DNA from: Squalus acanthias
Taxonomy: Eukaryota
Assembly: GCA_030390025.1 (NCBI GenBank)
Contig: JASTWF010000288.1
Span: 372,001 to 436,000 of the forward strand
DNA length: 64,000 nt
Direction: 5' to 3'
Below, one piece after another: positions 26,884 to 56,630 of the stretch (the stretch's first letter is position 1; each line of letters opens with the position of its first letter). Below the pieces are notes generated by a model. It was not told the DNA's origin. It did no database searches and saw nothing but the letters and a program-made list of their open reading frames with translations. Both the position numbers and the translations under genes were made by a program.

Positions 26884-26950
26884 CCCTTCTGTTCAAGTGA
26901 CTGCTGATATCTGAGAGAGAGGAGACGAATTTGCGGCCATCAATGCTCCA

Positions 26951-27017
26951 ATGGCTTCTCTGCTGACAGCATGTTTCTTTTTTATCTTCCTGTGCTGTTT
27001 TCACGATGCATATTCTG
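26951..27017 (+). CDS. MHC class I-like heavy chain exon 1, signal peptide MASLLTACFFFIFLCCFHDAYS(G)
   Basis: ATGG start; hydrophobic core; A-Y-S cleavage motif; 67 nt ending at phase-1 donor G|GTAAGA; splices in frame to give mature N-terminus GAHSL. Confidence 0.85.
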
Positions 27018-27106
27018 GTAAGACAGCCATCTATCTAACTCTCTAATTTCCTCTATTGAGAACTCTGAGCGCTTTCTCTCGGAACAGTTTTTGGAGATTC
27101 ACTTAC

Positions 27107-27300
27107 CTGCAAGTTTTCTTTGATCTGAGAGAGGTTCTGCTTCTCTCGCTCTCCCTCCTCCTTTCTTCTGTGTTCACTGATGGGACTCGGGAGCTCTGCC
27201 CGGCCTCGATCCTCCGATGTCCTTCACAAACTGCACTGGGCTACGAACATCGAACGGGCAATGGAGCGATCTTTTCAAACCACTGAATGCTGTGCATGCG
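27107..27300 (-). other. Candidate non-coding first exon of an antisense transcript (5' end unknown)
   Basis: Perfect minus-strand donor CAG|GTAAGT (ACTTACCTG at 27101-27109) in unique, CpG-containing DNA. Confidence 0.25.
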
Positions 27301-27994
27301 ACACAAAACAGGAAATGCGACAGACGGAGGGGTCTGGTTCGCATTAGCAGGAACAGGATTGGTCTGCGTGGCTGCAAACAACTCAAAACTGAAAGTGTTT
27401 CACGAAAGTGATTTATCGGAAACGAGGTGGCAGTGGCTGGAAATTACAGCAAAAAGCCAAGTTGAAGGGATGAGATGGCCGTGCGGCTGGTCTCCATGAC
27501 TTCTAGTATAGAAGAGGAAGTTAGCATTTGGGTGTCACTGGTTGTAAATTGTATCGGGACATCTTGAAGAGGTTACAAAAGAGAGTTCTTATCAGATCTC
27601 TGAGGCTAGTCCTCAAAGAAAGCAGCTGATCACATCTCATAGAAAGTACATGGGGGCTAAATTAGATGATGCGATGATCCGGGGCGATACAGGCAGCAGA
27701 TTAAACTGCTGCTCCCGGCTGTTTGAGATGATCGCTGCGTGCAGCCAGCGCTACCTGTGCTGTTCAATGGCTACACATCAGCAGTGGGTCCGATATCACC
27801 AGTGCAGAGCGCTACTTAAAGGCAGCTTGCAGCGGGTAAAGGGGAGGTGCATTGTAGCTGCAGGAAGTGGTGGGATTCAGTTGTCAATTGAGCCTGTGCT
27901 GTCAAAGGTTGAAGAAAGGGTGGCCATTGGAGAGAGCATGCACCAAGGCTTTCAGACAATGCACTGGAGGTCTTAGTGGAAGAGGTGGAATGTA

Positions 27995-29038
27995 ATGCTC
28001 CTTCTACATTTTGTCCAACAAACACTCACAGGGCAGGTACAGTAAGGGTTAAAATAGAATACTGCTCGCTCTATACTGTCCCATCAAACACTCCCAGGGC
28101 AGGTACAGCACGGTTTAGCTACAGAGTAAGGCTCCTTCGACACTGTTCCATCAAACACGCTCTGGGCAGGCACAGTACGGATTTGATTCCGAGTAAAGCT
28201 CCCTCGACAGTGTCCCATCAAACACTCCTAGCACAAGTATAGCAATGGTTAGAAACAGAGTAAAGCACCCTGCACAGTGACCCATCAAATACACCCAAGA
28301 CAAGTACAGCACGTTAGATACAGAGTGAAGCTTCCTCTACAGTGACCCATCATACACTCCCTGGACAGGTACAGCACGGTTTAGATACAGAATAAAGCTA
28401 CCTCTACAGTGTCCCATCAAACACGCCATGGGCAGGGACATCACTGATTAAATACAGAGTAAAGCTCCCTCTACGCTGTCGCATCAAATCTTCCCAGAAA
28501 ATGTACAGCACGGTTTAGATGCAAAGTAAAGCTCCCTCTACACTTTCCCATCAAACACTCTAAGGGCTTACAGCAGGTAAGATACACAGTAAAACTCCCT
28601 CTAAACCTTCCCATCAAACACTCCCAGGGCAGGTACAGCACGGGTTAGATACCAAGTAAAGCTCCCTCTACACTGTCCCATCAAACACTCCCAGGGCAGG
28701 TACAGCACGGGTTAGATACCAAGTAAAGCTCCCTCTACACTGTCCCATCAAACACTCCCAGGGCAGGTACACCACGGGTTAGATACCAAGTAAAGCTCCC
28801 TCTACACTGTCCCATCAAACACTCCCAGGGCAGGTACACCATGGGTTAGATACCAAGTAAAGCTCCCTCTACACTGTCCCATCAAACACTCCCAGGGCAG
28901 GTACAGCACAGGTTAGATACCAAGTAAAGCTCCCTCTACACTGTCCCATCAAACACTCTCAGGGCAGGTACAGCACAGGTTAGATACAGAGTAAAGCTCC
29001 CTCGATACAATCCTGTCAAACACTCCCAGGCAGGTACA
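27995..29038. repeat. Block of 67-bp satellite, degenerate at left and homogeneous at right
   Basis: Same consensus as 25068-26811. Confidence 0.93.
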
Positions 29039-30182
29039 GAGCATGCACCAAGGTTTTCAGACAATGCTCTTAAGGTCCTGGTGGATGAGGTGGACTGTAC
29101 CAGCTGGGCGGTCAGTGGGGGGCGAGGGGGGTTGTTGGCGTATTGGGGCGTGCAGGGGGCCCTCCAGGCACATGCTATGGTGGCAGTGAGAATAAGTTGC
29201 GGCGGAGCTCAGTACCAGGAGTGTCTCTCCAAGAACATGGGAAAAGTTTAACAATCTCGCACGAGTTGCAAGGTCAGTGAATCCATCTACCCATTGCACC
29301 ACTAGCCTCATCCACTGCACAGTTCACTACCCCCCCATCACCCATCTATCAATCAGGAATGAACAGTGACACTCACATGCTTTACCTCCCCCTCACAATC
29401 TTAGCACTGTTGCAAGCCGAGCACCCTTAACTCACAGTTCGCACACACTGACATCTCTTCAACCATGACAGCCACATCACCCAAACATATATTACAGGAC
29501 ACTCACTGACACACTTCCCTCTTTCTTGCTGGATAATGTAGCGCCTAACAGCAGACAACAGGAAAGAACTGGAGGAGGACAAGTGCTCATGCTTGTTTTA
29601 ACTTCATGGAAAGAACAGTGCTGACCATCACAGAAAGTGGCTTCGCTGAGGCCGTGGCCACTGGCCGGGCTGAAGCGATTGATTAGGAGGGTATCTGTAT
29701 GAGGTGCTGCCCCTGCTGTCCTCTCTCAGGCTGACAACATTCCTGCTCCCATCCCTGCTACTCTGCCTGTCAGCCAGCCAGCCCAGTCTGCTGCAGCCCG
29801 GCCAAGATGGTGCAGTCTGAAGCCGGGCCCTCTCGGCCCAGAGGTGCTCGAGGTCGCCCTCCAAGCCCATCTGCCGTCTCCCCCATTGAAGGTCAGCAGC
29901 CTTTCACCAGCCATGCTACAGCCATTGGGGAAGCACCTGGTAGGAGCACCAGCAGAGACAAAGGCACACGGAAGAGGCACTAAGGGAATGCACGAGGGTG
30001 ATTAGTTTATTTTTGCATGCATTATGTCATGATTTAATATACAAATTTGGATTGGAATTTGCATTTTTTATTGGCTATGTTGTCGGAAAGAGGACGATGT
30101 GATAGAGTAAAAGTAAGGATTGTGAGACTGTTGGTGAATGGGGAGTTGTGGTTGAGGTTACTGACATCGCGCATCAATTATT

Positions 30183-31144
30183 TTATCATGTAGAGCCCGG
30201 GCAGAAAGGGGCTGTCTATGTCTACGGCTCTCTTCACTTTCCCAGTCATGCTCAATTCCAAGAGGAAGGCCTATCAGGCCGCCCATGTCTGGGAGCAACT
30301 TCTTTCCGCACAAGCCTTTAAATCACCAAAAAAGTACTTCAGCGTCAACCAGACCACTCCCTGTAGACTATTGAAATGTGAGGCAAGTATAGGAGAGCTG
30401 GAAAAATGCGTAGAATTGCACCAGCAGTCAGAAGAAATAATCCAGCGAATAACCTATCATTAGTGGATGATCCCTTGAAGTAGCGCTGGTGGGTGGGGGT
30501 GGGGGGATCCTTCATGCCATATAACATCATGTTCAGCTGTGTGAGGTTAAGACAGGGCATATACTGGAGCATGGCATTCAACAATGGCAGCGCTGGCATC
30601 AAATCAGTGATTGAGGTCCAAATCTGCCTACTCTGCCTGCTGCCAGCGGTCGTTAGTTGAGCGTGCACAAGCTATTGCACCAAGTTTGCGTCCGGTGCAC
30701 TTCACAGAATCACAGAATCCCCACAGTGCAGATAGAGGCCATTTCGGCCCATCGAGCCTGCACCGACACATATCCCACCCTATCCCCGTATTTAATCCCC
30801 CCTAACACTAAGGGTCAATTTATCATAGCCAAATCAACCTAACCCGCACATCTTTGGACTGTGGGAGGAAACCGGAGCACCTGGAGGAAACCCACGCAGA
30901 CACGGGGAGAATGTGCAAACTCCACACAGACAGTCACCCAAGGCCGGATTCGAACCCGGGTCCCTGGCGCTGTGAGGCAACAGTGCTAACCACTATGCCA
31001 CCGTGTTGCCCTTAGGCTCCCAGACATGTTGCTCCCAGACATGGGTGGCCTGATAGGCCTTCCTCTTGGAATTAAGCATGACTGGGAAAGTGAAGAGAGC
31101 CGTAGACATAGACAGCCCCTTTCTGCCCGGGCTCTACATGATAA
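30183..31144. repeat. 117-bp inverted repeat, arms 30183-30299 and 31028-31144
   Basis: Arms are reverse complements with 2 mismatches by manual comparison. Confidence 0.92.
30702..31011 (-). mobile_element. Full-length tRNA-derived V-SINE (HE1-like)
   Basis: Minus strand A box TGGCATAGTGG, B box GGTTCGAATCC, V-domain (GGGAGGAAACCGGAGCACC..GAAACCCACGCAG on +), CR1-like (ATTCTGTG)n tail. Confidence 0.9.
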
Positions 31145-31275
31145 CGTCATATTAGGTGGCTGATTAGTGCCGGAAACAAGGGGCAAACACAACCCAATTT
31201 ACCCCCCCCCCCCCATGTATTTATATCGCACTTTATCACATCTCAGAAACATCCCACAGAAGGAATTTGTATTTC

Positions 31276-32860
31276 ATAGAATCGGAGAAACTTGCAGCAC
31301 AGAAGGAGGCCATTCGGCCCGCCGTGCCTGTGCTGGCACTTTGAAAGTACAGTCGTGCTTATTCCCACATCCCCGCTTTTTATCCGTAACCCTGCAAGTT
31401 CCGGATCCCCAAGTACCCGTCCAACTCCCTTTGAAAATTATTGATGGAAACTGCTTCCATCACCTTTTCAGGTCGAGCGTTCCCGATCCCCACAACTCTC
31501 CGAGTGAAAGACTGTCTCCTCTTCTCCCCTCGAGATCTTTTGCCCATGATTATAAATCTATGACCTCTGGTCATTGGCCCACTCGCCAGAGGGAACAGTT
31601 TTCCTCTCTCTACTCTATCAAAACCTCTCATCATCTTGAGAACCTCTATTAGGTCGCCTCTTCCGAGGAGAACAGTCCAACAGTCAGTGGAACTGAATAT
31701 CAGGCACTGCGTAAAACGGTTGGCCAATCCCGTAGCGCTAGTTTTGCGCCATGACCTGAGATGAATTTCTGGGCCTATAACTATCCTCATCATGACCTGC
31801 TACTTTACCAAGTTTCGTGTCATCTGCAAACTTTATAACGCTGCTCCCTACACCTGAGTCTAGCTCGTTTATAAAAATTGAAGATTAAAGGACCCAAAAC
31901 TGACCCTGGGGGAACACCACTGCAAACCACCTCCGTGTCTGAAAAATATCCATCTACCACCACCCTGTGCTTCCTGTCACTGAGCCAAGTCCATATCTAT
32001 CCCACCACTTTCCCCTTAATTCCTTGGGCTTCCATCTTCTTAATAAGCCTCCTGTGTGGCACTTTGTCGAATGGCTTCCGAATGTTCATATATACAACAT
32101 CAACTGCACTACGTTGATCTGTCACTACCTTCTCTGTTACCTCATCAATGAATTCAACCAAGCTTGATTGGCACCCCATCCACCACCTTAAACATTCACT
32201 CCCTCCACCACCGGCGCACCGTGGCTGCAGTGTGTACCATCTACAAGAGGCACTGCAGCAACTTGCCAAGGCTTCTTCGGCAGCACCTCCCAAACCCGCG
32301 ACCTCTTCCACCTAAACGGACAAGGGCAGCAGGCGCATGGGAACACCACCACCTCCAAGTTCCCCTCCAAGTCAAACACCATCCTGACTTAGAAGTATAT
32401 CGCCGATCCTTCATCGTCGCTGGGTTAAAATCCTGGAACTCCCTCCCTAACAGCACTGTGGGAGAACCTTCAACACACGGACTGCAGCGGTTCAAGAAGG
32501 CGGCTCACCACCATCTTCTCAAGAGTAATTAGGGATGGGCAATAAATGCTGGCCTTGCCAGTGACGCCCACATCCCAAAAACGAATAAAGACAAAGCTAG
32601 ACAGGCACGATTTACCTTTGTCAAATCCATGCTGTCTTGATTAACCCATGCCTTTCCAAATGAAAGTTTATTTTGTCCCTGATACTGGTTTCCAATATCT
32701 TCCCCACCATCGATGTTAGGCTGACTGACCTGTAGTTTCCTGGTTTATCCCTTTGCCCTTTCTTGAATAGTGTTATAACATTAACAACCCTCCAGTCCTC
32801 CGGCCCCTACTCCTGTAACCAATGAGGATTGAAAGATTATGACCAATGCCTCTGCAATTG
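31276..32860 (-). mobile_element. Degenerate CR1 fragments with nested elements
   Basis: RGDLIEVLKMMRGFDRV and VDVVYM..KPFDKVPH on minus strand. Confidence 0.8.
32165..32593 (+). mobile_element. 3' end of a different non-LTR retrotransposon family, TSD AAGCT
   Basis: SLHHRRTVAA..IYK, SWNSLP, FKK ORF2-type C-terminus; GAATAAA tail; AAGCT on both sides. Confidence 0.75.
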
Positions 32861-33099
32861 AAATCGCACATTATCACATCTCAGAAACATCCCACAAAAA
32901 GAACTTCTATTAATGTCCCACTTTATCACATCTCTCAGTGAGTGTGGGAGCCGACACTTCTGGGTAGGGCTCGGCACCAGATTAATGTCCAACACTCTGT
33001 TACCCATATACTGCACGATCGAGCGCTCTTCGGGGGAAGGGGAGGGAACTGCTATGGGGGATGACAGATCAGTCTAACACCTTATTTTCATCCTTCCAG

Positions 33100-33360
33100 G
33101 TGCTCACTCCCTAAGTGTCCTACATACAGAACTGGCGCAGTGCGCTGATTTCCCCGAGTTTCATGCAGTGGTGATGTTGGACGATACTGTGATCATGAAC
33201 TATAACAGTGATACCAGCACTGTCCATCTTAAACATGAATGGATCGCAAAACACTTAACTGCTGATCAGAAGGAGCTTGAAGATCTGTCCGCACGAGAGG
33301 CCCACAATATAATGAAAACAGGACTGAACAATACCATGAGACTGACTAAGAGCACAGTCG
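33100..33360 (+). CDS. MHC class I-like heavy chain exon 2, alpha1 domain: GAHSLSVLHTELAQCADFPEFHAVVMLDDTVIMNYNSDTSTVHLKHEWIAKHLTADQKELEDLSAREAHNIMKTGLNNTMRLTKSTVG
   Basis: Branch CTAAC at 33074 plus TTTTCATCCTTCCAG acceptor; 261 nt, phase 1-1; donor G|GTGAGT; motifs GxHSL, FPEF.AV..LDD, Y.SD, W. Confidence 0.93.
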
Positions 33361-33599
33361 GTGAGTATTGATCAAGCGAATAAACTCAGTTTCCCAATTC
33401 CCCCGTGTGTGGTACTGAGCCCCACACAGAGCAGGAAGAGCACAGGTTCCATCCGTGTCTGTGCACAGTGAGCTGATCTATGACTGGGTGGTAGTGTGTG
33501 TACGGCTCTGAGCTTCATTGTTGCTGCGCTGGGGAGGGCCAGAGTGAGCTAGGGTCCCTGTTCAGAATACCAATTACAGAAGAGATTAGTTTGGAGGAC

Positions 33600-33950
33600 C
33601 CCAGGGATGGGAGCCTTTAGTTCCGAGGGACCAGAGGAACTAGGGTTGTTATGAAAGAAACCGGAGAAGGTTTAGAGGAGATCTTCTGGAGGTTTCAATG
33701 CTGGAAAGGGTTTCAATGAACCATTCCCACTGGTCAGAGAGTTGCTCACTAAAGGGCATCAATTTAAGGTCAACACCGAAGGAATGAAGGAGAGATTAGG
33801 AGGAATATCTTTAAACAGAGGTTTGATACAACAGGGAGTGACTAACCAGAAACAGTGGGGGGAGCGCATTCAAGAACAGCTTCGAGAGAGCAGTGAAACA
33901 TTTAAATTGGACTGGCAAATGTGACAGAGAAGGAGACTGAGGGGGGAACT
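33600..33950 (+). mobile_element. Very degenerate CR1 3' fragment
   Basis: GAGAAGGTTTAGAGGAGAT..TTCCCACTGG..GGGCATCAATTTAAGGT resemble CR1 3' motifs. Confidence 0.5.
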
Positions 33951-33960
33951 CGTTCTGAAA

Positions 33961-34780
33961 GAGAGCACAGGGGGTGATGGGGGAATGGGTCTGAGGGAGA
34001 GCTCGATCAGAGAGAGAGAGAGAGAGAGCACGGGGGGCGATGGGGGAATGGGTCTGAGGGGAGAGCTCGATCAGAGAGAGAGAGAGAGAGAGAGAGCACG
34101 GGGGGCGATGGGGGAATGGGTCTGAGGGAGAGCTCGATCAGAGAGAGAGAGAGAGAGAGAGAGCACGGGGGGCGATGGGGAATGGGTCTGAGGGGAGAGC
34201 TCGATCAGAGAGAGAGAGAGAGAGAGAGAGACACGGGGGGCGATGGGGGAATGGGTCTGAGGGAGAGCTCGATCAGAGAGAGAGAGAGAGAGAGAGCACA
34301 GGGGGTGATGGGAGAATGGGACTGAGGGAGAGAGCTCGATCAGAGAGAGAGAGAGAGAGCGCACAGGGGGCGATGGGGGAATGGGACTGAGGGGGGAGCT
34401 CGATCAGAGAGAGAGAGAGAGAGAGCACGGGGGGTGATGGGGGAATGGGTCTGAGGAGAGAGCTCGATCAGAGAGAGAGAGAGAGAGAGCGAGCGAGCGC
34501 ACGGGGTGATGGGGGAATGGGTCTGAGGGGAGAGCTCGATCAGAGAGAGAGAGAGAGAGCACGGGGGGTGATGGGGGAATGGGTCTGAGGAGAGAGCTCG
34601 ATCAGAGAGAGAGAGAGAGAGAGCACGGGGGGTGATGGGGGAATGGGTCTGAGGAGAGAGCTCGATCAGAGAGAGAGAGAGAGAGAGAGCACGGGGGGTG
34701 ATGGGGGAATGGGTCTGAGGAGAGAGCTCGATCAGAGAGAGAGAGAGAGAGAGCGCACAGGGGGCGATGGGGGAATGGGA
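33961..34780. repeat. Compound tandem repeat of about 60 bp: GCACGGGGGGYGATGGGGGAATGGGTCTGAGGGAGAGCTCGATCA + (GA)n, about 13 copies
   Basis: Directly visible; unit length varies with the GA tract. Confidence 0.95.
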
Positions 34781-37700
34781 CTGTACACTTTCTCTGCGCT
34801 GGTTCCCGGCCCCATCTGCATTGTCTCTGTACTTGTTCTCAGTCCCCTGCACACTGTCTCTGCACTGGTTCCCAGCCCCTGTGCACTATTTCCCAGCCCC
34901 CTGTACACTGTCTCTGCGCTGTTACCCAACCCCTGTGCACTGTCTCTGTACTGGTTCACAGCCCCCTGTGCACTGTCTCTTCACTGGATCCCAGCCCTCT
35001 GTGCACACTGTCTCTGTACTGGTTCCCAGCCCCCTGTGCACTGTCTCTGGACTGGTTCCAGGCCCCCTGTGCACTGTCTCTGTACTGGATCCCTATCTCT
35101 GTGCACTGTCTCTGTACTGGTTCCCAGCCCCCTGTGCACTGTCTCTGTACTTGTTCCCAGCCACCTGTGCACTGTCTCTGTACTGGATCCCAGCCCCCTG
35201 TGCACTGTCTCTTCACTGGATCCCTATCTCTGAGCATTGTCTCTGTCCTGGTTCCCAGCCCTCTTCACAAGTTTCTGCACTAGTTCCAGGCCCACTGCGC
35301 ACTGTCTCTGTACTGGTTCCATGCCCCCTACACACTGTCTCTGTACTGGTTCCAGGCCCCCTGTGCACACTGTCGCTGTACTGGTTCCAGGCCCCCTGCA
35401 CACTGTCTCTGTACTGGTTCCAGGCCCCCTGTGCACACTGTCTCTGCACTGGTTCCAGGCCACCTGTGCACTCTGTCTCTGCACTGGTTCCCAGCCCCCT
35501 GTGCACTGTCTCTGTACTGGTTCCAGGCCCCCTGCACACTGTCTCTGTACTGGTTCCAGGCCCCCTACACACTGTCTCTGCACTGGTTCCAGGCCCCCTA
35601 CACACTGTCTCTGCACTGGTTCCAGGCCCCCTGTGCACCCTGTCTCTTTACTGGTTCCAGGCCCCCTGCACACTGTCTCTGTACTGGTTCCAGGCCCCCT
35701 GCACACTGGCCCTGTACTGGTTCCAGGCCCCCTGCACACTGTCTCTGTACTGGTTCCCGGCCCCCTGCGCACTGTCTCTGCACTGGTTCCAGGCCCCCTG
35801 CACACTGTCCCTGTACTGGTTCCAGGCCCCCTGTACAGTGTCTCTGTACTGGTTCCAGGCCCCCTACACACTGTCTTTGTACTGATTCCAGGCCCCCTAC
35901 ACACTGTCAATGTACTGGTTCCAGGCCCCTGCACACTGTCTCTGTACTGGTTCCAGGCCCCCTGAACACTGTCTCTGTACTGGTTCCAGGCCCCCTGCAC
36001 ACTGTCTCTGTACTGGTTCCAGGCCCCCTGTGCACACTGTCTCTGTACTGGTTCCAGGCCCCCTACACACTGTCTCTGTACTGGTTCCAGGCCCCCTGCA
36101 CACTGTCTCTGCACTGGTTCCAGGCCCCCTACACACTGTCTCTGTACTGGTTCCAGGCCCCCTGCACACTGTCTCTGTACTGGTTCCAGGCCCCCTGCAC
36201 ACTGTCTCTGCACTGGTTCCAGGCCCCCTGCACACTGTCTCTGTACTGGTTCCAGGCCCCCTGCACACTGTCTCTGTACTGGTTCCAGGCCCCCTGCACA
36301 CTGTCTCTGTACTGGTTCCAGGCCCCCTACACACTGCCTCTGTACTGGTTCCAGGCCCCCTGCACACTGTCTCTGTACTGGTTCCAGGCCCCCTGCACAC
36401 TGTCTCTGTACTGGTTCCAGGCCCCCTGCACACTGTCTCTGTACTGGTTCCAGGCCCCCTGCACACTGTCTCTGTACTGGTTCCAGGCCCCCTGCACACT
36501 GTCTCTGCACTGGTTCCAGGCCCCCTGCACACTGTCTCTGTACTGGTTCCAGGCCCCCTGCACACTGTCTCTGTACTGGTTCCAGGCCCCCTACACACTG
36601 TCTCTGTACTGGTTCCAGGCCCCCTGCACACTGTCTCTGCACTGGTTCCAGCCCCCTGCACACTGTCTCTGTACTGGTTCCAGGCCCCCTGCACACTGTC
36701 TCTGTACTGGTTCCAGGCCCCCTGCACACTGTCTCTGTACTGGTTCCAGGCCCCCTGCACACTGTCTCTGTACTGGTTCCAGGCCCCCTGCACACTGTCT
36801 CTGTACTGGTTCCAGGCCCCCTGTGCACACTGTCTCTGTACTGGTTCCAGGCCCCCTGCACACTGTCTCTGTACTGGTTCCAGGCCCCCTGCACACTGTC
36901 TCTGTACTGGTTCCAGGCCCCCTGCACACTGTCTCTGTACTGGTTCCAGGCCCCCTGCAGCACTGTCTCTGTACTGGTTCCAGGCCCCCTGCACACTGTC
37001 TCTGTACTGGTTCCAGGCCCCCTAGCACACTGTCTCTGTACTGGTTCCAGGCCCCCTACACACTGTCTCTGCACTAGTTCCAGGCCCACTGCGCACTGTC
37101 TCTGTACTGGTTCCATGCCCCCTACACACTGTCTCTGTACTGGTTCCAGGCCCCCTGTGCACACTGTCGCTGTACTGGTTCCAGGTCCCCTGCACACTGT
37201 CTCTGTACTGGTTCCAGGCCCCCTGTGCACACTGTCTCTGCACTGGTTCCAGGCCACCTGTGCACTCTGTCTCTGCACTGGTTCCCAGCCCCCTGTGCAC
37301 TGTCTCTGTGCTGGTTCCAGGCCCCCTGCACACTGTCTCTGTACTGGTTCCAGGTCCCCTACACACTGTCTCTGCACTGGTTCCAGGCCCCCTACACACT
37401 GTCTCTGCACTGGTTCCAGGTCCCCTGTGCACCCTGTCTCTTTACTGGTTCCAGGCCCTCTGCACACTGTCTCTGTACTGGTTCCAGGCCCCCTGCACAC
37501 TGGCCCTGTACTGGTTCCAGGCCCCCTGCACACTGTCTCTGTACTGGTTCCCGGCCCCCTGCGCACTGTCTCTGCACTGGTTCCAGGCCCCCTGCACACT
37601 GTCCCTGTACTGGTTCCAGGCCCCCTGTACAGTGTCTCTGTACTGGTTCCAGGCCCCCTACAAACTGTCTTTGTACTGGTTCCAGGCCCCCTACACACTG

Positions 37701-46700: not shown

Positions 46701-49700
46701 ATGCCCCTTTGCACACTGTCTCTGTACTGGTTCCAGGCCCCTACACACCTGTCTCTGCACTGGTTCCAGGCCCACTGTCACACTGTCTCTGCACTGGTTC
46801 CCAGGCCCCCTGCACACTGTCTCTGTACTGGTTCCAGGCCCCTTGCACACTGTCTCTGTACTGGTTCCCAGGCCCCTTCACACTGTCTCCTGTACTGGTT
46901 CCAGGCCCCCTGCACACCTGTCTCCTGTACTGGTTCCAGGCCCCCTGCACACCTGTCTCTGTACTGGTTCCCAGGCCCCCTGTGCCACACGTGTCTCTGT
47001 ACTGGTTCCAGGCCCCCTGTCACACTGTCTCTGCACTGGTTCCAGGCCCCCCTGTACACTGTCTCTGTACTGGTTCCAAGGACCCCCTACACACTGTCTA
47101 TGTACTGGTCCAGGCCCCCTGACACACTGTCTTCTGTACTGGTTCCAGGCCCCTGCACACTGTCTCTGTACTGGTTCCAGGCCCCCCTGCACACTGTCTC
47201 TGTACTGGTTCCAGGCCCCCTGCACACTGTCTCTGTACTGGTTCCAGGCCCCCTGTGCACTGTCTCTGTACTGGTTCCAGGCCCCCTGTACACTGTCTCT
47301 GTACTGGTTCCAGGCCTCCTGTACACTGTCTCTGTACTGGTTCCAGGCCCCCTACACACTGTCTCTGTACTGGTTCCAGGCCCCCTGTACACTGTCTCTG
47401 CACTGGTTCCAGGCCCCTACACACTGTCTCTGTACTGGTTCCAGGCCCCCTGTGCACACTGTCTCTGTACTGGTTCCAGGCCCCCTACACACTGTCTCTG
47501 TACTGATTCCAGGCCCCCTGTGCACACTGTCTGTACTGGTTCCAGGCCTCCTACACACTGTCTCTGCACTGGTTCCAGGCCCTCTACACACTGTCTCTGC
47601 ACTGGTTCCAGGCCCCCTGTGCACTGTCTCTGTACTGGTTCCAGGCCCCCTACACACTGTCTCTGTACTGGTTCCAGGCCCCCTACACACTGTCTCTGTA
47701 CTGGTTCCAGGCCCCCTGGCACACTGTCTCTGTACTGGTTCCAGGCCCCCTGCACACTGTCTCTGTACTGGTTCCAGGCCCCCTGTACACTGTCTCTGCA
47801 CTGGTTCCAGGCCTCCTACACACTGTCTCTGCACTGGTTCCAGGCCCCCTGCACACTGTCTCTGTACTGGTTCCAGGCCCCCTACACACTGTCTCTGTAC
47901 TGGTTCCAGGCCCCCTGTACACTGTCTCTGCACTGGTTCCAGGCCCCCTGTGCACACTGTCTCTGCACTGGTTCCAGGCCCCCTGCACACTGTCTCTGCA
48001 CTGGTTCCAGGCCCCCTGTGCACACTGTCTCTGCACTGGTTCCCAGCCCCCTGCACACTGTCTCTGCACTGGTTCCAGGCCCCCTGCACACTGTCTCTGC
48101 ACTGGTTCCAGGCCTCCTGTGCACACTGTCTCTGCACTGGTTCCAGGCCCCCTGTGCACACTGTCTCTGCACTGGTTCCAGGCCCCCTGCACACTGTCTC
48201 TGCTACTGTTCCAGGCCCCCTACACACTGTCTCTGTACTGGTTCCAGGCCCCCTACACACTGTCTCTGCTCTGGTTCCAGGCCCCCTGCACACTGTCTCT
48301 GTACTGGTTCCAGGCCCCCTGCACACTGTCTCTGTACTGGTTCCAGGCCCCCTGCACACTGTCTCTGTACTGGTTCCAGCCCCCTGCACACTGTCTCTGT
48401 ACTGGTTCCAGGCCCCCTGTGCACACTGTCTCTGTACTGGTTCCAGGCCCCCTGTCACACTGTCTCTGCACTGGTTCCAGGCCCCCTGAGCACACTGTCT
48501 CTGTACTGGTTCCAGGCCCCCTGCACACTGTCTCTGCACTGGTTCCAGCCCCCTGCACACTGTCTCTGTACTGGTTCCAGGCCCCCTGCACACTGTCTCT
48601 GTACTGGTTCCAGGCCCCCTGCACACTGTCTCTGTACTGGTTCCATGCCCCCTTCACACTGTCTCTGTACTGGTTCCAGGCCCCCTGCACACTGTCTCTG
48701 TACTGGTTCCAGGTCCCCTGTGCACACTGTCTCTGTACTGGTTCCAGGCCCCCTACACACTGTCTCTGTACTGGTTCCAGGCCCCCTGTGCACTGTCTCT
48801 GCACTGGTTCCAGGCCCCCTGCACACTGTCTCTCTACTCGTTCCAGGCCCCCTACACACTGTCTCTGTACTGGTTCCAGGCCCCCTACACACTGTCTCTG
48901 CCTTGGTTCCAGGCCCGCTGTGCACACTGTCTCTGTACTGGTTCCAGGCCCCCTGCACACTGTCTCTGTACTGGTTCCAGGCCCCCTGTGCACACTGTCT
49001 CTGTACTGGTTCCCAGCCCCCTGTGCACACTGTCTCTGTACTGGTTCCAGGCCCCCTGTGCACACTGTCTCTGTACTGGTTCCAGGCCCCCTACACACTG
49101 TCTCTGCACTGGTTCCCAGCCCCCTGTGCACACTGTCTCTGTCTGGTTCCCAGCCCCCTGTGCACACTGTCTCTGCACTGTTTCCCAGCCCCCTGTGCAC
49201 ACTGTCTCTGCACTGGTTCCAGGCAGCCTGTACACTGTCTCTGTACTGGTTCCAGGCCCCCTGCGCACTGTCTCTGTACTGGTTCCAGGCCCCCTGTACG
49301 CTGTCTCTGTACTGGTTCCAGGCCCCCTGTGCACACTGTCTATGTACTGGTTCCAGGCCCCCTGTGCACACTGTCTCTGTACTGGTTCCAGGCCCCCTAC
49401 ACACTGTCTCTGTACTGGTTCCAGGCCCCCTGTGCACTGTCTCTGTACTGGTTCCAGGCCCCCTACACACTGTCTCTGTACTGGTTCCAGGCCCCCTACA
49501 CACTGTCTCTGTACTGGTTCCAGGCCCCCTGCACACTGTCTCTGCACTGGTTCCAGGCCCCCTACACACTGTCTCTGTACTGGTTCCAGGCCCCCTGTCA
49601 CACTGTCTCTGTACTGGTTCCAGGCCCCCTGTACACTGTCTCTGTACTGGTTCCAGGCCCCTGCACACTGTCTCTGTACTGGTTCCAGGCCCCCTGCACA

Positions 49701-52700
49701 CTGTCTCTGCACTGGTTCCAGGCCCCCTACACACTGTCTCTGTACTGGTTCCAGGCCCCCTGTGCACACTGTCTCTGTACTGGTTCCAGGCCCCCTACAC
49801 ACTGTCTCTGTACTGGTTCCAGGCCCCCTACACACTGTCTCTGTACTGGTTCCAGGCCCCCTGCACACTGTCTCTGTACTGGTTCCAGGCCCCCTGCACA
49901 CTGTCTCTGCACTGGTTCCAGGCCCCCTGTGCACACTGTCTCTGTACTGGTTCCAGGCCCCTACACACTGTCTCTGCACTGGTTCCAGGCCCCCTGCACA
50001 CTGTCTCTGTACTGGTTCCAGGCCCCCTACACACTGTCTCTGTACTGGTTCCAGGCCCCCTGTACACTGTCTCTGTACTGGTTCCAGGCCCCCTGTGCAC
50101 ACTGTCTCTGTACTGGTTCCAGGCCCCCTGTCACACTGTCTCTGCACTGGTTCCAGGCCCCCTGTGCACACTGTCTCTGTACTGGTTCCAGGCCCCCTTG
50201 CACACTGTCTCTGTACTGGTTCCAGTCCCCTGCACACTGTCTCTGTACTGGTTCCAGGCCCCTGCACACTGTCTCTGAACTGGTTCCAGGCCCCCTGCAC
50301 ACTGTCTCTGTACTGGTTCCAGGCCCCCTGCACACTGTCTCTGTACTGGTTCCAGGCCTCCTGCACACTGTCTCTGTACTGGTTCCAGGCCCCCTACACA
50401 CTGTCTCTGTACTGGTTCCAGGCCCCCTGTACACTGTCTCTGTACTGGTTCCAGGCCCCCTGCACACTGTCTCTGTACTGGTTCCAGGCCCCCTGTACAC
50501 TGTCTCTGTACTGGTTCCAGGCCCCCTACACACTGTCTCTGTACTGGTTCCAGGCCCCCTGCACACTGTCTCTGTACTGGTTCCAGGCCCCCTGCACACT
50601 GTCTCTGTACTGGTTCCAGGCCCCCTGTCACACTGTCTCTGTACTGGTTCCAGGCCCCCTGTGCACACTGTCTCTGCACTGGTTCCAGGCCCCCTGCACA
50701 CTGTCTCTGCACTGGTTCCAGCCCCCTGCACACTGTCTCTGTACTGGTTCCAGGCCCCCTGCACACTGTCTCTGTACTGGTTCCAGGCCCCCTGCACACT
50801 GTCTCTGTACTGGTTCCAGGCCCCCTGCACACTGTCTCTGTACTGGTTCCAGGCCCCCTGCACACTGTCTCTGTACTGGTTCCAGGCCCCCTGCACACTG
50901 TCTCTGTACTGGTTCCAGGCCCCCTGTGCACTGTCTCTGCACTGGTTCCAGGCCCCCTGCACACTGTCTCTCTACTCGTTCCAGGCCCCCTACACACTGT
51001 CTCTGTACTGGTTCCAGGCCCCCTACACACTGTCTCTGCACTGGTTCCAGGCCCCCTGTGCACACTGTCTCTGTACTGGTTCCAGGCCCCCTGCACACTG
51101 TCTCTGTACTGGTTCCAGGCCCCCTGTGCACACTGTCTCTGTACTGGTTCCCAGCCCCCTGTGCACACTGTCTCTGTACTGGTTCCAGGCCCCCTGTGCA
51201 CACTGTCTCTGTACTGGTTCCAGGCCCCCTACACACTGTCTCTGCACTGGTTCCCAGCCCCCTGTGCACACTGTCTCTGTCTGGTTCCCAGCCCCCTGTG
51301 CACACTGTCTCTGCACTGTTTCCCAGCCCCCTGTGCACACTGTCTCTGCACTGGTTCCAGGCAGCCTGTACACTGTCTCTGTACTGGTTCCAGGCCCCCT
51401 GCGCACTGTCTCTGTACTGGTTCCAGGACCCCTGTACGCTGTCTCTGTACTGGTTCCAGGCCCCCTGTGCACACTGTCTATGTACTGGTTCCAGGCCCCC
51501 TGTGCACACTGTCTCTGTACTGGTTCCATGCCCCCTACACACTGTCTCTGTACTGGTTCCAGGCCCCCTGTGCACTGTCTCTGTACTGGTTCCAGGCCCC
51601 CTACACACTGTCTCTGTACTGGTTCCAGGCCCCCTACACACTGTCTCTGTACTGGTTCCAGGCCCCCTGCACACTGTCTCTGCACTGGTTCCAGGCCCCC
51701 TACACACTGTCTCTGAACTGGTTCCAGGCCTCCTGTACACTGTCTCTGTACTGGTTCCAGGCCTCCTGTACACTGTCTCTGTACTGGTTCCAGGCCCTCT
51801 GCACACTGTCTCTGTACTGGTTCCAGGCCCCCTGCACACTGTCTCTTCACTGGTTCCAGGCCCCCTACACACCGTCTCTGTACTGTTTCCCAGCCCCCTG
51901 TGCACACTGTCTCTGCACTGGTTCCAGGCCCCCTACACACTGTCTCTGTACTGGTTCCAGGCCCCCGACACACTGTCTCTGTGCTGGTTCCAGACCCCTG
52001 CACACTGTCTCTGTGCTGGTTCCAGGCCCCCTGCACACTGTCTCTGCACTGGTTCCAGGCCCCCTGTGCACACTGTCTCTGTACTGGTTCCAGGCCCTCT
52101 ACACACTGTCTCTGCACTGGTTCCAGGCCCGCTACACCCTGTCTCTGAACAGGTTCCAGGCCCCCTACACACTGTCTTTGTACTGGTTCCAGGCCTCCTG
52201 TACACTGTCTCTGTACTGGTTCCAGGCCTCCTGTTCACTGTCTCTGTCCTGGTTGCAGGCTCCCTGTGCACACTGTCTCTGCACTGGTTCCAGGCCCCCT
52301 GTGCACACTGTCTCTGTACTGGTTCCAGGCCCCCTACACACTGTCTCTGTGCTGATTACAGTCCCCTGCACACTGTCTCTGTACTGGTTCCAGGCCCTCT
52401 ACACCCTGTCTCTGAACAGGTTCCAGGCCCCCTGCACACTGTCTCTGTACTGGTTCCAGGCCTCCTTTACACTGTCTCTGTACTGGTTCCAGGCCTCCTG
52501 TACACTGTCTCTGTACTGGTTCCAGGCCTCCTGTACACAGTCTCTGTACTGGTTCCAGGCCCCCTGTACACTGTCTGTGTACTGGTTCCAGGCCCCCTGC
52601 ACACTGTCTCTGTCCTCGTTCCAGGCCCCCTGTACACTGTCTCTGCACTGGTTCCAGGCCTCCTACACACTGTCTTTGCACTGGTTCCAGGACCCCTGCA

Positions 52701-55700
52701 CTCTATCTCTGTACTGGTTCCAGGCCCCCTGCACACTGTCTCTGTACTGGTTCCAGGCCCCCTGTACACTGTCTCTGCACTGGTTCCAGGCCCCCTGTGC
52801 ACACTGTCTCTGCACTGGTTCCAGGCCCCCTACACACTGTCTCTGCACTGGTTCCCAGCCCCCTGTGCACACTGTCTCTCCACTGGTTCCCAGCAACCTG
52901 TGCACACTGTCTCTGCACTGGTTCCAGTCCCCCTGCACACTGTCTCTGCACTGGTTCCAGGCCTCCTACACACTGTCTTTGCACTGGTTCCAGGACCCCT
53001 GCACTCTATCTCTGTACTGGTTCCAGGCCCCCTGCACACTGTCTCTGTACTGGTTCCAGGCCCCCTGTGCACTGTCTCTGCACTGGTTCCAGGCCCCCTG
53101 CACACTGTCTCTCTACTCGTTCCAGGCCCCCTACACACTGTCTCTGTACTGGTTCCAGGCCCCCTACACACTGTCTCTGCATTGGTTCCAGGCCCGCTGT
53201 GCACACTGTCTCTGTACTGGTTCCAGGCCCCCTGCACACTGTATCTGTACTGGTTCCAGGCCCCCTGTGCACACTGTCTCTGTACTGGTTCCCAGCCCCC
53301 TGTGCACACTGTCTCTGTACTGGTTCCAGGCCCCCTGTGCACACTGTCTCTGTACTGGTTCCAGGCCCCCTACACACTGTCTCTGCACTGGTTCCCAGCC
53401 CCCTGTGCACACTGTCTCTGTCTGGTTCCCAGCCCCCTGTGCACACTGTCTCTGCACTGTTTCCCAGCCCCCTGTGCACACTGTCTCTGCACTGGTTCCA
53501 GGCAGCCTGTACACTGTCTCTGTACTGGTTCCAGGCCCCCTGCGCACTGTCTCTGTACTGGTTCCAGGACCCCTGTACGCTGTCTCTGTACTGGTTCCAG
53601 GCCCCCTGTGCACACTGTCTATGTACTGGTTCCAGGCCCCCTGTGCACACTGTCTCTGTACTGGTTCCATGCCCCCTACACACTGTCTCTGTACTGGTTC
53701 CAGGCCCCCTGTGCACTGTCTCTGTACTGGTTCCAGGCCCCCTACACACTGTCTCTGTACTGGTTCCAGGCCCCCTACACACTGTCTCTGTACTGGTTCC
53801 AGGCCCCCTGCACACTGTCTCTGCACTGGTTCCAGGCCCCCTACACACTGTCTCTGAACTGGTTCCAGGCCTCCTGTACACTGTCTCTGTACTGGTTCCA
53901 GGCCTCCTGTACACTGTCTCTGTACTGGTTCCAGGCCCTCTGCACACTGTCTCTGTACTGGTTCCAGGCCCCCTGCACACTGTCTCTTCACTGGTTCCAG
54001 GCCCCCTACACACCGTCTCTGTACTGTTTCCCAGCCCCCTGTGCACACTGTCTCTGCACTGGTTCCAGGCCCCCTACACACTGTCTCTGTACTGGTTCCA
54101 GGCCCCCGACACACTGTCTCTGTGCTGGTTCCAGGCCCCCTGCACACTGTCTCTGTGCTGGTTCCAGGCCCCCTGCACACTGTCTCTGCACTGGTTCCAG
54201 GCCCCCTGTGCACACTGTCTCTGTACTGGTTCCAGGCCCTCTACACACTGTCTCTGCACTGGTTCCAGGCCCGCTACACCCTGTCTCTGAACAGGTTCCA
54301 GGCCCCCTACACACTGTCTTTGTACTGGTTCCAGGCCTCCTGTACACTGTCTCTGTACTGGTTCCAGGCCTCCTGTTCACTGTCTCTGTCCTGGTTCCAG
54401 GCTCCCTGTGCACACTGTCTCTGCACTGGTTCCAGGCCCCCTGTGCACACTGTCTCTGTACTGGTTCCAGGCCCCCTACACACTGTCTCTGTGCTGATTA
54501 CAGTCCCCTGCACACTGTCTCTGTACTGGTTCCAGGCCCTCTACACCCTGTCTCTGAACAGGTTCCAGGCCCCCTGCACACTGTCTCTGTACTGGTTCCA
54601 GGCCTCCTTTACACTGTCTCTGTACTGGTTCCAGGCCTCCTGTACACTGTCTCTGTACTGGTTCCAGGCCTCCTGTACACAGTCTCTGTACTGGTTCCAG
54701 GCCCCCTGTACACTGTCTGTGTACTGGTTCCAGGCCCCCTGCACACTGTCTCTGTACTGGTTGCAGGCCCCCTACACACTGCCTCTGCACTGGTTCCAGG
54801 CCCCCTACACACCGTCTCTGTACTGTTTCCCAGCCCCCTGTACACACTGTCCCTGCACTGGTTCATGGCCCCCTGTGCACACTGTCTCTGCACTGGTTCC
54901 AGGCCCCCTGTGCACACTGTCTCTGCACTGGTTCCAGGCCCCCTGTGCACTGTCTCTGTACTGGTTCCAGGCCCCCTACACACTGTCTCTGTACTGGTTT
55001 CAGGTCCCCTGTGCACTGTCTCTGTACTGGTTCCAGGCCCCCTACACACTGTCTCTGTACAGGATTCAGGCCCCCTTTACACTGTCACTGTCGTGGTTCC
55101 AGGCCCACTACACACTGTCTCTGCACTGGTTCACGGCCCCCTGTGCACACTGTCTCTGCACTGGTTCCAGGCCCCCTGCGCACTGTCTCTGTACTGGTTC
55201 CAGGCCCCCTACACACTGTCTCTGCACTGATTCCAGGCCCCCTGTACACTGTCTCTGTACTGATTCCAGGCCCCCTGTACACTGTCTCTGTACTGGTTCC
55301 AGGCCCCCTACACACTGTCTCTGTACTGATTCCCCGCCCCCTGTACACTGTCTTTGTACTGGTTCCAGGCCCCCTGCGCACTGAATCTGTACTGGTTCCA
55401 GGCCCCCTGTGTACACTGTCTCTGTAATGGTTCCAGGCCCCCTGCACACTGTCTCTGCACTGGTTCCAGGCCCCCAGAGCACACTGTCTCTGCACTGGTT
55501 CCAGGCCCCCTGTGCACACTGTCTCTGTACTGGTTCCAGGCCCCCTACACACTGTCCCTGCACTGGTTCCAGGCCCCCTGTGCACTGTCTCTGTACTGGT
55601 TCCAGGCCTCCTACACACTGTCTCTGTACTGGTTCCAGTCCCCCTACACACTGTCTCTGCACTGGTTCCAGGCCCCCTGTGCACTGTCTCTGTACTGGTT

Positions 55701-56135
55701 CCAGGCCCCCTGTGCACACTGTCCCTGTACTGGTTCCAGGCCCCCTGCGCACTGTCTCTGTCCTGGTTCCAGGCCCCCTGTACACTGTCTCTGCACTGGT
55801 TCCAGGCCTCCTACACACTTTCTTTGTACTGGTTCCAGGACCCCTGCACTCTGTCTCTGTACTGGTTCCAGGCCCCCTGCACACTGTCTCTGTACTGGTT
55901 CCAGGCCTCCTGTGCACACTGTCTCTGCACTGGTTCCCGGCCCCCTGCACACTGTCTCTGTATTGGTTCCAGGCCTCCTGTGCACACTGTCTCTGTACTG
56001 GTTCCCGGCCCCCTGCACACTGTCTCTGTACTGGTTCCAGGCCTCCTGTGCACACTGTCTCTGTACTGGTTCCAGTCCACCTGTGCACACTGTCCCTGCA
56101 CTGGTTCCCAGCCCCCTGTGCACTGTCTCTGCATT
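34781..56135. repeat. 21.3-kb 33-bp minisatellite CACACTGTCTCTGTACTGGTTCCAGGCCCCCTG (35-bp and 32-bp variants), in MHC intron 2
   Basis: About 640 units; degenerate edges; higher-order duplications. Confidence 0.99.
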
Positions 56136-56344
56136 GGAGAACACCAAGGACCCCAGGCATACAGTAGGCCTCATGCCTCCAGCTTAATTTCCTTAGGAGT
56201 GGCACCCAAGGCTCCTTAATGCCCACCATCGTATTCTCATGCCCAATAGTCTGAATCTGGCCCAACCGATCATCTCTACAGGTGCAACATTCATTCTTCA
56301 TTACGAGTTTGGTGATTCTTTTCCGAATGTTCATTCTCTTTCAG

Positions 56345-56620
56345 GCCCCCACCTATTTCAGTGGATGAAGAAGGTCGAGGTAAACGATGATGTCCTTGTG
56401 AAGTGGGACGTACTCTTCCGGTTCGATGGCAAGGATTTCATTCGCCTGGACCAGCAGACCATGAACTGGGTCGTGGTGAGATCTGAAGCTCAGAGCTTAG
56501 AGAGACAGTTTACCAAAGAGCCAGACTGGAGAAACACCTGGAGGGAAAATCTCGAACACACCGTGGTCGTTGGATTGAACGATCTGCTTCAGAAAGGCAA
56601 ACAGTTTGTGGAAAGAAAGA
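56345..56620 (+). CDS. MHC class I-like heavy chain exon 3, alpha2 domain: GPHLFQWMKKVEVNDDVLVKWDVLFRFDGKDFIRLDQQTMNWVVVRSEAQSLERQFTKEPDWRNTWRENLEHTVVVGLNDLLQKGKQFVERK
   Basis: TTCATTCTCTTTCAG acceptor; 276 nt (canonical alpha2 exon size), phase 1-1; donor A|GTACGT; motifs G.H..QWM, FDGKDFI.LD..T..W, LL..GK...ERK. Confidence 0.93.
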
Positions 56621-56630
56621 GTACGTTTGG

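What the first reader, a model, noticed from the sequence alone, without database searches (positions are those of the whole stretch)
26951..56620. Intact-looking, highly divergent non-classical MHC class I gene hidden among repeats
Seen: three exons of 67, 261 and 276 nt with GT-AG phase-1 junctions splice into an uninterrupted leader-alpha1-alpha2 frame with mature N-terminus GAHSL. The ORF track shows only fragments of it. Known: this is the canonical class I exon layout. By-eye alignment to HLA-A2 numbering suggests all terminal peptide anchors are replaced (Y7V, Y59Q, R84L, T143L, K146Q, W147F, Y159N, Y171L; also W167G). Fold and beta2m-contact residues remain (H3, D29, H93, Q96, D119, G120, D122, W133). 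Inference: a beta2m-binding molecule that does not present peptides classically. It may belong to a described shark non-classical lineage (UBA/UCA/UDA/UEA/UFA) or to a new one; I cannot tell without a tree.
Basis: partly seen in the sequence, partly recalled or inferred. Interest (0 to 1): 0.85.

Follow-up and report, generated by a model that had tools for sequence, protein, structure and literature searches.

The report
Divergent expressed shark MHC class Ib gene
This is a real, transcribed but very divergent MHC class I-like gene of a shark that has lost the residues used to hold peptides; it is an unannotated, unusually divergent addition to the many non-classical class I genes already known in sharks.

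Summary
The three exons (26951-27017, 33100-33360, 56345-56620) have GT-AG borders, phase 1 and open frames. Pfam MHC_I matches the alpha1 exon at 21.6 bits and the alpha2 exon at 43.9 bits (cut-off 28.3), in profile order.

Transcript-like contigs in two studies hold exon 3 with exactly the predicted borders. Their 333-337 upstream letters fit exons 1+2 (328 nt).

All eight peptide-terminus anchors are replaced. C101, C164, W60 and the N86 sequon are lost too.

An exhaustive search of 1.84 billion representatives found nothing above about 40% identity to alpha2. The nearest kin are a multicopy, shark-only family that also lacks the alpha2 disulphide, probably UEA (name inferred). Both domain trees put the gene beside or at the base of that family on very long branches. 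AU tests do not exclude other placements.

No alpha3 or TM exon lies in the window. The transcripts run at least 478-609 nt past exon 3.

Verdict: an expressed, unannotated, highly divergent class Ib gene. It is a new member of a known kind. Its function and beta2m binding are untested. The scan also noted the cysteine loss on this window (s1-889992).

The parts
26812..26950 (+). Short unique upstream stretch between a 67-bp tandem array and the ATG. It holds ATTGG (26857-26861), CCAAT (26878-26882) and an out-of-frame upstream ATG (26943-26945). Putative promoter and 5' UTR.
   Evidence: Read directly; array end. No functional test. The contig 5' ends lie about 4-9 nt before the ATG; this is inferred from lengths.
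26951..27017 (+). Exon 1: start codon and signal peptide (22 codons plus 1 nt), donor G|gtaaga, phase 1.
   Evidence: No Pfam hit, as expected for a leader.
27018..33099 (+). Intron 1 (6,082 nt) with a 67-bp tandem array (27992-29039) and retroelement fragments.
33100..33360 (+). Exon 2: alpha1 domain (261 nt), acceptor ccag|G, donor G|gtgagt, phase 1.
   Evidence: (MHC_I 21.6 bits, profile 3-79). tblastn: 34 of 153 class I proteins hit it at E<=1e-3.
33361..56344 (+). Intron 2 (22,984 nt): a 64/198-bp array (33960-34783) and a 33-bp satellite (34896-56131, 636.6 copies, 90% matches).
   Evidence: The acceptor-like TTCCAG|GCCCCC occurs 455 times; every row printed (200 of 455) is on the + strand.
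56345..56620 (+). Exon 3: alpha2 domain (276 nt), acceptor tcag|G, donor A|gtacgt, phase 1. It lacks both disulphide cysteines.
   Evidence: (43.9 bits, profile 93-177). Contigs of 1,093 and 1,220 nt lie on 56344-56621 only, with 0 differences. 144 of 153 class I proteins hit it at E<=1e-3.
56621..64000 (+). Start of intron 3: retroelement fragments and CT-rich low-complexity arrays. No further class I exon was found here.
   Evidence: In one search the parts of the contigs beyond exon 3 lie nowhere in 56622-62100.

Best explanation
This is the 5' half (leader, alpha1, alpha2) of a transcribed, highly divergent non-classical MHC class I (class Ib) gene of a shark. Its remaining exons lie beyond the window. 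Its introns are swollen by tandem repeats; intron 2 holds a 21-kb satellite. The product enters the secretory pathway through a cleavable signal peptide and forms an alpha1/alpha2 platform. This platform cannot hold peptide N- and C-termini in the classical way, because every conserved anchor is replaced, five of the eight by hydrophobic residues (V, L, L, F, L). It also has no alpha2 disulphide. I infer that it is either a carrier of a non-peptide, hydrophobic ligand or a ligand-free surface marker read by a lymphocyte receptor. It is not an antigen-presenting molecule of the classical kind. In evolution it is closest to the multicopy, shark-only, disulphide-less class Ib family (probably UEA). 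It is a long-branched sister or basal offshoot of that family, not a crown member. Shown: exon structure, family assignment, residue pattern, use of exon 3 in spliced RNA. Inferred: linkage of exons 1 and 2 to exon 3 in one mRNA, ligand type, beta2m binding, lineage name.
For: Exons and frames. MHC_I profile in the right order. PDB class I hits. Atlas: 23 of 30 hits are in MHC_I-only clusters, best score 0.97. Expression: 8 runs from 2 studies hold exon 3. Contigs of 1,093 nt (depth 15) and 1,220 nt (depth 30) match 56344-56621 with 0 differences and are not collinear on either side. Depth is 0 in the 199 nt before the exon in all 4 runs. Upstream lengths of 337 and 333 nt compare with 328 nt for exons 1+2. 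Residues: 0 of 8 anchors kept, V101 and V164. Kinship: the best single-domain hits of 1.84e9 representatives are shark proteins P0005 and P0006. That family has no C101 in 0 of 72 rows and V7 in 45 of 70. It shares the two alpha2-helix tryptophans with this gene: 70 of 72 and 72 of 72 rows, against D/N and K in famB. In the alpha2 tree the gene is sister to all 72 family rows (97/73). In the alpha1 tree it lies inside the family branch (97/95*). Both exons have similar extreme end branches (1.96 and 1.82), as expected for one gene. About 200 codons are open despite that divergence, which argues for constraint (inference).
Against: No alpha3, TM or cytoplasmic exon is in the window, so completeness is unproven. 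I did not see the contig letters outside exon 3, so the exon 2-exon 3 junction rests on lengths and one matching letter. The run type of X2 and X5 is only guessed as RNA. Two single-cell RNA runs gave almost no reads on exon 3 (depth 0.04 and 0.28). AU tests do not reject a placement with the other shark family: p 0.375 for alpha2 and 0.277 for alpha1. W60 and W147 are invariant in both shark families (70/70 and 12/12; 72/72 and 12/12), and the N86 sequon is present in 69 of 70 famA rows. All three are lost here, which could mean decay. No orthologue was found, so no dN/dS is possible.
Confidence: 0.68

Rival explanations
1. It is a transcribed but decaying gene (an expressed pseudogene or gene remnant). 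The class I fold signature survives, but function is lost. The long branch and the loss of otherwise invariant residues reflect relaxed constraint.
For: End branches are 1.82 and 1.96, against medians of 0.099 and 0.13. W60K, W147F and loss of the N86 sequon occur where both shark families are (near-)invariant. No alpha3 or TM exon is in the window. No annotated relative exists above about 40% identity. Exon 3 is almost absent from two single-cell RNA runs.
Against: Three exons with about 200 codons have no stop or frameshift and consensus-like splice sites, despite more than one substitution per site of divergence. Contigs of depth 15 and 30 in two studies are spliced at the exact borders and continue 478-609 nt. 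The fold and floor residues H3, D29, H93, Q96, D119, G120, D122 and W133 are kept.
Confidence: 0.2
2. Exons 1-2 and exon 3 belong to two different genes or gene remnants, brought together by the satellite array or by assembly across it. In that case the three-exon model is a chimera.
For: The 23-kb intron is 92% satellite. The exon 2-exon 3 junction was not seen letter by letter. Any class I mRNA would have about 330 nt before its alpha2 exon.
Against: The exons share strand, order and matching phase 1. The window has no N and no other alpha1 or alpha2 exon. Both exons are equally and unusually divergent and go to the same family in separate trees. The contig letter before exon 3 equals the last letter of exon 2 (weak, 1 in 4 by chance).
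Confidence: 0.07
3. It is the local orthologue of an already named but unpublished or little-sampled shark lineage (UCA of dogfish, or the CD1-like UFA/UGA), not an offshoot of the multicopy family.
For: UFA and UGA are described only by personal communication, as CD1-like, single or low copy and MHC-linked (passages read in PMC10751288 and PMC12562908). The hydrophobic replacement of anchors would fit. AU tests leave the placement open.
Against: Single-copy genes conserved in sharks and rays should be annotated in the more than 12 elasmobranch proteomes present in the library. Yet no representative exceeds about 40% identity to alpha2. No solved structure scores above 37 bits. The derived residues V101 and the two helix tryptophans are shared with the multicopy family.
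Confidence: 0.1

Closest known systems
Multicopy shark class Ib family typified by Heterodontus XP_067865876.1 (P0005) and Cetorhinus XP_078422955.1 (P0006). Probably the UEA lineage of Almeida et al. 2021; the name is inferred, that paper was not readable here.
   Same: Best hits for alpha2. No C101 (0 of 72) and no disulphide. V7 in 45 of 70 rows. H93, Q96, D119, G120, D122 and W133 kept. Two helix tryptophans shared. Same alpha1 and alpha2 lengths without gaps. Both ML domain trees join them.
   Different: Global identity is only 28.6-38.5% in alpha2 (median 34.1%) and 12.9-31.6% in alpha1. Within the family it is at least 52.7% in alpha2 and has a median of 49.4% in alpha1. This gene keeps H3 and D29 where the family has N (51/70, 66/70). 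It loses W60, K146, W147, Y171 and the N86 sequon, which the family keeps (70/70, 65/72, 72/72, 52/72, 69/70). It has a different leader peptide. No annotated orthologue exists.
Single-copy elasmobranch class Ib family typified by the nurse shark 'nonclassical MHC class I antigen' (P0130). Probably UDA; the name is inferred.
   Same: MHC_I fold. H3 and D29 shared. Alpha1 identity up to 37.5%. A clade with it is not rejected by AU tests.
   Different: That family keeps C101 and C164 (12/12) and the anchors (Y7 in 11/12, Y59 in 10/12, R84, T143, W147, Y159 and Y171 in 12/12, K146 in 11/12). It occurs in rays as well. This gene keeps none of the anchors.
Classical MHC class I (for example the solved chains 5gjx, 7cpo and 5h5z, and HLA-E 6ggm)
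   Same: Exon layout leader/alpha1/alpha2 with phase-1 introns. Profile match over both domains.
   Different: 0 of 8 terminus-binding residues, no alpha2 disulphide, no N86 sequon. Alpha3 not seen.
CD1 and the CD1-like shark UFA/UGA (described only in passages of PMC10751288 and PMC12562908)
   Same: A class I-like platform whose anchors are replaced largely by hydrophobic residues. A non-peptide ligand is conceivable.
   Different: No sequence of UFA or UGA was available, and no CD1 family appeared among the Pfam, PDB or Atlas hits. The resemblance is functional speculation only.

Membership tests
MHC class I superfamily (Pfam PF00129 MHC_I) | Alpha1 and alpha2 domains match the MHC_I profile in order | tested here: met
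   alpha1 exon 21.6 bits (profile 3-79; below the 28.3 cut-off on its own); alpha2 exon 43.9 bits (profile 93-177; above the cut-off). Searches agree.
MHC class I superfamily (Pfam PF00129 MHC_I) | One exon per domain, phase-1 introns, leader exon first | tested here: met
MHC class I superfamily (Pfam PF00129 MHC_I) | Ig C1-set alpha3 domain, then transmembrane and cytoplasmic exons | tested here: inconclusive
   tblastn of 36 and then 153 class I proteins found none in the window. The contigs extend 478-609 nt past exon 3, outside 56622-62100. Relatives P0006 and P0014 join alpha2 directly to a TM segment.
MHC class I superfamily (Pfam PF00129 MHC_I) | Alpha2 intradomain disulphide C101-C164 | tested here: not met
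   V at both positions. The same loss is seen in the nearest shark family (0 of 72 rows with both Cys).
MHC class I superfamily (Pfam PF00129 MHC_I) | Association with beta2-microglobulin | not tested
   The joined model was not folded. Only the floor residues Q96, D119, G120 and D122 are kept.
Classical (peptide-presenting) class I | Conserved residues binding peptide termini (7, 59, 84, 143, 146, 147, 159, 171) | tested here: not met
   V, Q, L, L, Q, F, N, L: 0 of 8 kept.
Multicopy disulphide-less shark class Ib family (probably UEA) | Clusters with the family in phylogeny | tested here: inconclusive
   Alpha2: sister to all 72 rows, 97/73. Alpha1: inside the family branch, 97/95*. AU tests do not reject a clade with the other family (p 0.375 and 0.277) or the family as a clade without it (p 0.432).
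Multicopy disulphide-less shark class Ib family (probably UEA) | Family-typical residues: no C101, V7, the two alpha2-helix tryptophans | tested here: met
Multicopy disulphide-less shark class Ib family (probably UEA) | Family invariants W60, W147 and N86; identity within the family range | tested here: not met
   K60, F147 and K86 here, against 70/70, 72/72 and 69/70 in the family. Alpha2 identity is at most 38.5% against a family minimum of 52.7%.
UCA, UFA, UGA (named shark lineages) | Orthology to the named reference sequences | not testable with these tools
   No named sequences were available. The J Immunol 2020 and 2021 papers are not held. Supplements are closed.

The most novel reading that the evidence does not exclude
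The gene founds a so far unnamed shark class Ib lineage that split from the disulphide-less multicopy family before that family diversified. It has been kept as an expressed gene with a remodelled groove (no terminus anchors, no W60 or W147, no disulphide, glycan site moved). It would then be a dedicated non-peptide-binding or ligand-free recognition molecule, possibly without alpha3 like some relatives.
Probability: 0.3. Interest if true: 0.55.

Novelty: new member of a known kind. Interest (0 to 1): 0.42.

Why it matters
Sharks are the oldest living vertebrates with an MHC. Their non-classical class I lineages are used to ask how early non-peptide or innate-type recognition arose. This would be an expressed gene that automated annotation missed, probably because a 21-kb satellite sits in an intron. 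It lies outside the sampled families. If confirmed, it adds one more old, structurally odd lineage. It is also a test case for how far the class I platform can drift (no disulphide, no W60 or W147) and still be kept. For gene finding it shows that class I genes can hide behind repeat-filled introns. It does not overturn anything known: sharks are already known to hold many divergent class Ib genes.

Tried and rejected
Alpha3 and TM search: tblastn with 36 and then 153 class I proteins found only exons 2 and 3. The one alpha3-like hit (24474-24662, E 0.003) is a LINE reverse-transcriptase segment carried by fused gene models. A hit of P0055 at 8726-8824 is also retroelement sequence.

An orthologue or closer relative was not found. 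Of 1.84e9 representatives, 36 reached E<=1e-3, none above 36% identity over a full single domain. The best in the enlarged set was 40%. The search for homologous proteins with the alpha1 exon found no candidate. That search sees only proteins of 47-150 aa, so the blank says little.

Lineage names: the two J Immunol papers that define UDA and UEA are not held. The names used here are inferred from copy number and taxon range and from passages of PMC10751288 and PMC12562908. What I say about the UEA and UCA abstract is recalled, not seen. Searches for UFA/UGA and for a disulphide-less shark class I listed nothing relevant; I read the listings only. Supplement S10 of PMC10751288 (reference sequences) is closed and would bear on the naming.

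AU tests could not fix the placement.

Rows dropped before the trees: of 150 proteins then held, 125 of 250-470 aa were aligned. Fused multi-copy models and short fragments were left out. Domains outside 78-95 aa (alpha1) or 85-100 aa (alpha2), those with X, and rows at least 95% identical to a kept row were dropped. That left 90 and 94 rows. No shark UAA, UBA or UCA sequence was in the set.

The joined exon 1-2-3 protein was never built, searched or folded. So there is no full-length search, no fold and no beta2m complex.


Full report
OBSERVATION. Exon 1 is 26951-27017: ATG, 22 codons plus 1 nt, donor G|gtaaga. Exon 2 is 33100-33360: acceptor ccag|G, donor G|gtgagt. Exon 3 is 56345-56620: acceptor tcag|G, donor A|gtacgt. 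The in-frame parts translate without stops into 22, 86 and 91 residues. The split codons read GGT and GGC. The window holds no N.

Pfam MHC_I matches the alpha1 exon (E 1.8e-4, 21.6 bits, profile positions 3-79) and the alpha2 exon (E 2.6e-11, 43.9 bits, positions 93-177, cut-off 28.3). Against solved structures the alpha2 exon matches 457 chains at E<=1 (best 5gjx at 2e-8, 7cpo, HLA-E). The alpha1 exon matches 112 (best 5h5z at 2.4e-7). The protein atlas puts the alpha1 exon in MHC_I clusters (best score 0.97; 23 of 30 hits in MHC_I-only clusters). This is far beyond chance: two exons in the right order, strand and phase, each matching its own half of one profile.

SURROUNDINGS. Intron 1 is 6,082 nt and intron 2 is 22,984 nt. 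A 33-bp satellite (34896-56131, 636.6 copies, 90% matches) makes up 92% of intron 2. A 64/198-bp array lies at 33960-34783. A 67-bp array (25068-26811) ends 140 nt before the ATG. The rest of the window is retroelement debris.

tblastn with 36 and later 153 class I proteins hit only exons 2 and 3: 34 and 144 queries at E<=1e-3. No alpha3, TM or cytoplasmic exon was found on either strand. One apparent alpha3 hit at 24474-24662 is LINE reverse transcriptase.

EXPRESSION. Eight runs from two studies and two organism labels hold exon 3 (share of words 0.56-1.00). Their type is only guessed as RNA. I laid window:56140-62100 on four runs.

In run X2 a 1,093-nt contig (depth 15) lies on 56344-56621 only, with 0 differences and 0 gaps. 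It has 337 letters before that part and 478 after, and these lie nowhere on the stretch. In run X5 a 1,220-nt contig (depth 30, opposite strand) does the same, with 333 letters upstream and 609 downstream in mRNA sense. Depth in the 199 nt before the exon is 0 in all four runs.

So exon 3 is used with the predicted borders. One letter at each end is ambiguous because it fits both ways. The molecules are not collinear with the genome, which is the signature of spliced RNA. The upstream lengths fit exons 1+2 (328 nt) plus 4-9 nt of leader. The letter before exon 3 equals the last letter of exon 2.

I did not see the contig letters, so the exon 2-exon 3 junction is inferred, not shown. Two single-cell RNA runs gave almost nothing on exon 3 (mean depth 0.04 and 0.28). 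The downstream exons, at least 609 nt of mRNA, are not in 56622-62100.

RESIDUES. I mapped positions through HMMER alignments to solved chains and through a MAFFT alignment with a classical-like reference, P0018. The position numbers are HLA-A2-style labels from my recall. All eight terminus-binding positions are replaced: V7, Q59, L84, L143, Q146, F147, N159, L171. W167 is G.

Further losses are both alpha2 cysteines (V101, V164; also noted by the scan as s1-889992), W60 (now K) and the N86 sequon. An NNT sequon lies six residues earlier.

RELATIVES. phmmer of the alpha2 exon against 1.84 billion cluster representatives gave 36 hits at E<=1e-3 and none at E<=1e-30. The best single-domain hits are shark proteins at 33-36% identity: P0005 of Heterodontus and P0006 of Cetorhinus. 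I looked up 30 of the 36. The other cartilaginous-fish hits are three more sharks of the same family and two Callorhinchus proteins. The rest are teleosts, reptiles and amphibians.

No model of this gene itself is in the library, so the gene is unannotated there. Because that search reads every representative, no annotated protein above about 40% identity to this alpha2 exists in the collection.

P0005 belongs to a large multicopy family found only in sharks among the 100 proteins returned. I call it famA. A second family, famB, is typified by the nurse shark 'nonclassical MHC class I antigen' (P0130). It has about one copy per species and includes rays.

From the passages I read (PMC10751288; PMC12562908), UEA and UBA are multicopy. 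UDA, UFA and UGA are single or low copy, and UBA derives from the classical lineage. I therefore take famA as probably UEA and famB as probably UDA. This is inference. The defining papers are not held and supplements are closed.

In famA, 0 of 72 non-redundant rows have C101 and none has both cysteines. V7 occurs in 45 of 70 rows. The two alpha2-helix tryptophans are shared with this gene (70/72 and 72/72), where famB has D/N and K. So the lost disulphide and V7 are family traits, not peculiarities of this gene.

This gene nevertheless stands apart. Global alpha2 identity to famA is 28.6-38.5% (median 34.1%), against at least 52.7% within famA. Alpha1 identity is 12.9-31.6% (median 24.1%). That is about as far as famA is from famB (medians 29-30%). 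It keeps H3 and D29 where famA has N. It loses W60, K146, W147, Y171 and N86, which famA keeps.

TREES. The domains were analysed separately and never joined. For alpha2 (95 rows, 91 columns), the gene is sister to all 72 famA rows, with support 97/73 and an end branch of 1.82 against a median of 0.099. For alpha1 (91 rows, 87 columns), it falls inside the branch that separates famA from everything else, with support 97/95*. There it sits in the basal polytomy, with an end branch of 1.96.

Both ML trees agree, and the two exons are equally divergent, which fits one gene. But AU tests do not reject a clade with famB (p 0.375 and 0.277; lnL differences 5.2 and 4.8) or famA as a clade without it (p 0.432). 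No UAA, UBA, UCA, UFA or UGA sequence was in the set.

HOW IT LIKELY WORKS. The signal peptide sends the chain into the ER. Alpha1 and alpha2 form the usual platform, whose floor residues are kept. The hydrogen-bond network that clamps peptide ends is gone, and five of the eight replaced anchors are hydrophobic. I therefore read it as a non-classical molecule that carries a non-peptide ligand or none, and that serves as a target for a lymphocyte receptor. That last step is inference by analogy with other class Ib molecules. Whether it has alpha3 and binds beta2m is open. Some famA relatives (P0006, P0014) join alpha2 directly to a TM segment.

An intact frame of about 200 codons despite more than one substitution per site argues for constraint. 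The loss of W60, W147 and N86 and the long branch leave a decaying transcribed gene as the main rival (0.2).

STEPS LEFT OUT. As the operators require, the joined exon 1-2-3 protein was not built, searched or folded.

VERDICT. This is a real, expressed, unannotated and highly divergent class Ib gene fragment (leader, alpha1, alpha2). It is nearest to the disulphide-less multicopy shark family but outside its crown. It is a new member of a known kind and of moderate interest.

Noticed in passing
window 34896-56131: The 33-bp intronic satellite carries on the sense strand an acceptor-like TTCCAG|GCCCCC, found 455 times exactly where none is expected by chance (every row printed, 200 of 455, is on the + strand). 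Exon 3 itself begins CAG|GCCCCC. So hundreds of decoy acceptors precede the real one, yet the contigs use the real border.
   Followed up: partly
window 1-3745: A 25-bp satellite with about 150 copies and 93% matches has an extreme GC skew (-0.76 to -0.90).
   Followed up: no
window 16922-17794, 22648-23038, 25068-26811, 27992-29039: The same 67-bp unit forms four separate tandem arrays. One ends 140 nt before the gene's ATG and another lies in intron 1.
   Followed up: no
window 26943-26966: An out-of-frame upstream ATG lies 8 nt before the start codon. It opens a 7-codon frame that overlaps the start codon. The inferred contig 5' ends lie about here.
   Followed up: no
proteins P0006 (Cetorhinus) and P0014 (Chiloscyllium): In these annotated relatives alpha2 is followed directly by a hydrophobic TM segment, with no alpha3 domain. 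P0005 has alpha3. The scan also noted an alpha3-less class I-like gene elsewhere in this genome (s1-890156).
   Followed up: partly
window 11755-14082, 7873-8910, 21076-22116, 59531-60316: Long stop-free retroelement frames are present: an endonuclease/reverse-transcriptase type of 776 aa, and an RT-like frame with a YIDD motif downstream of exon 3. These stretches are heavily covered in all four runs.
   Followed up: no
window 56633-56667: Reads and contigs show 'goes back 32-35' joints with about 9 extra letters, in up to 388 reads in X9. This suggests that most transcribed copies of this repeat family carry a roughly 33-nt duplication that this copy lacks.
   Followed up: no
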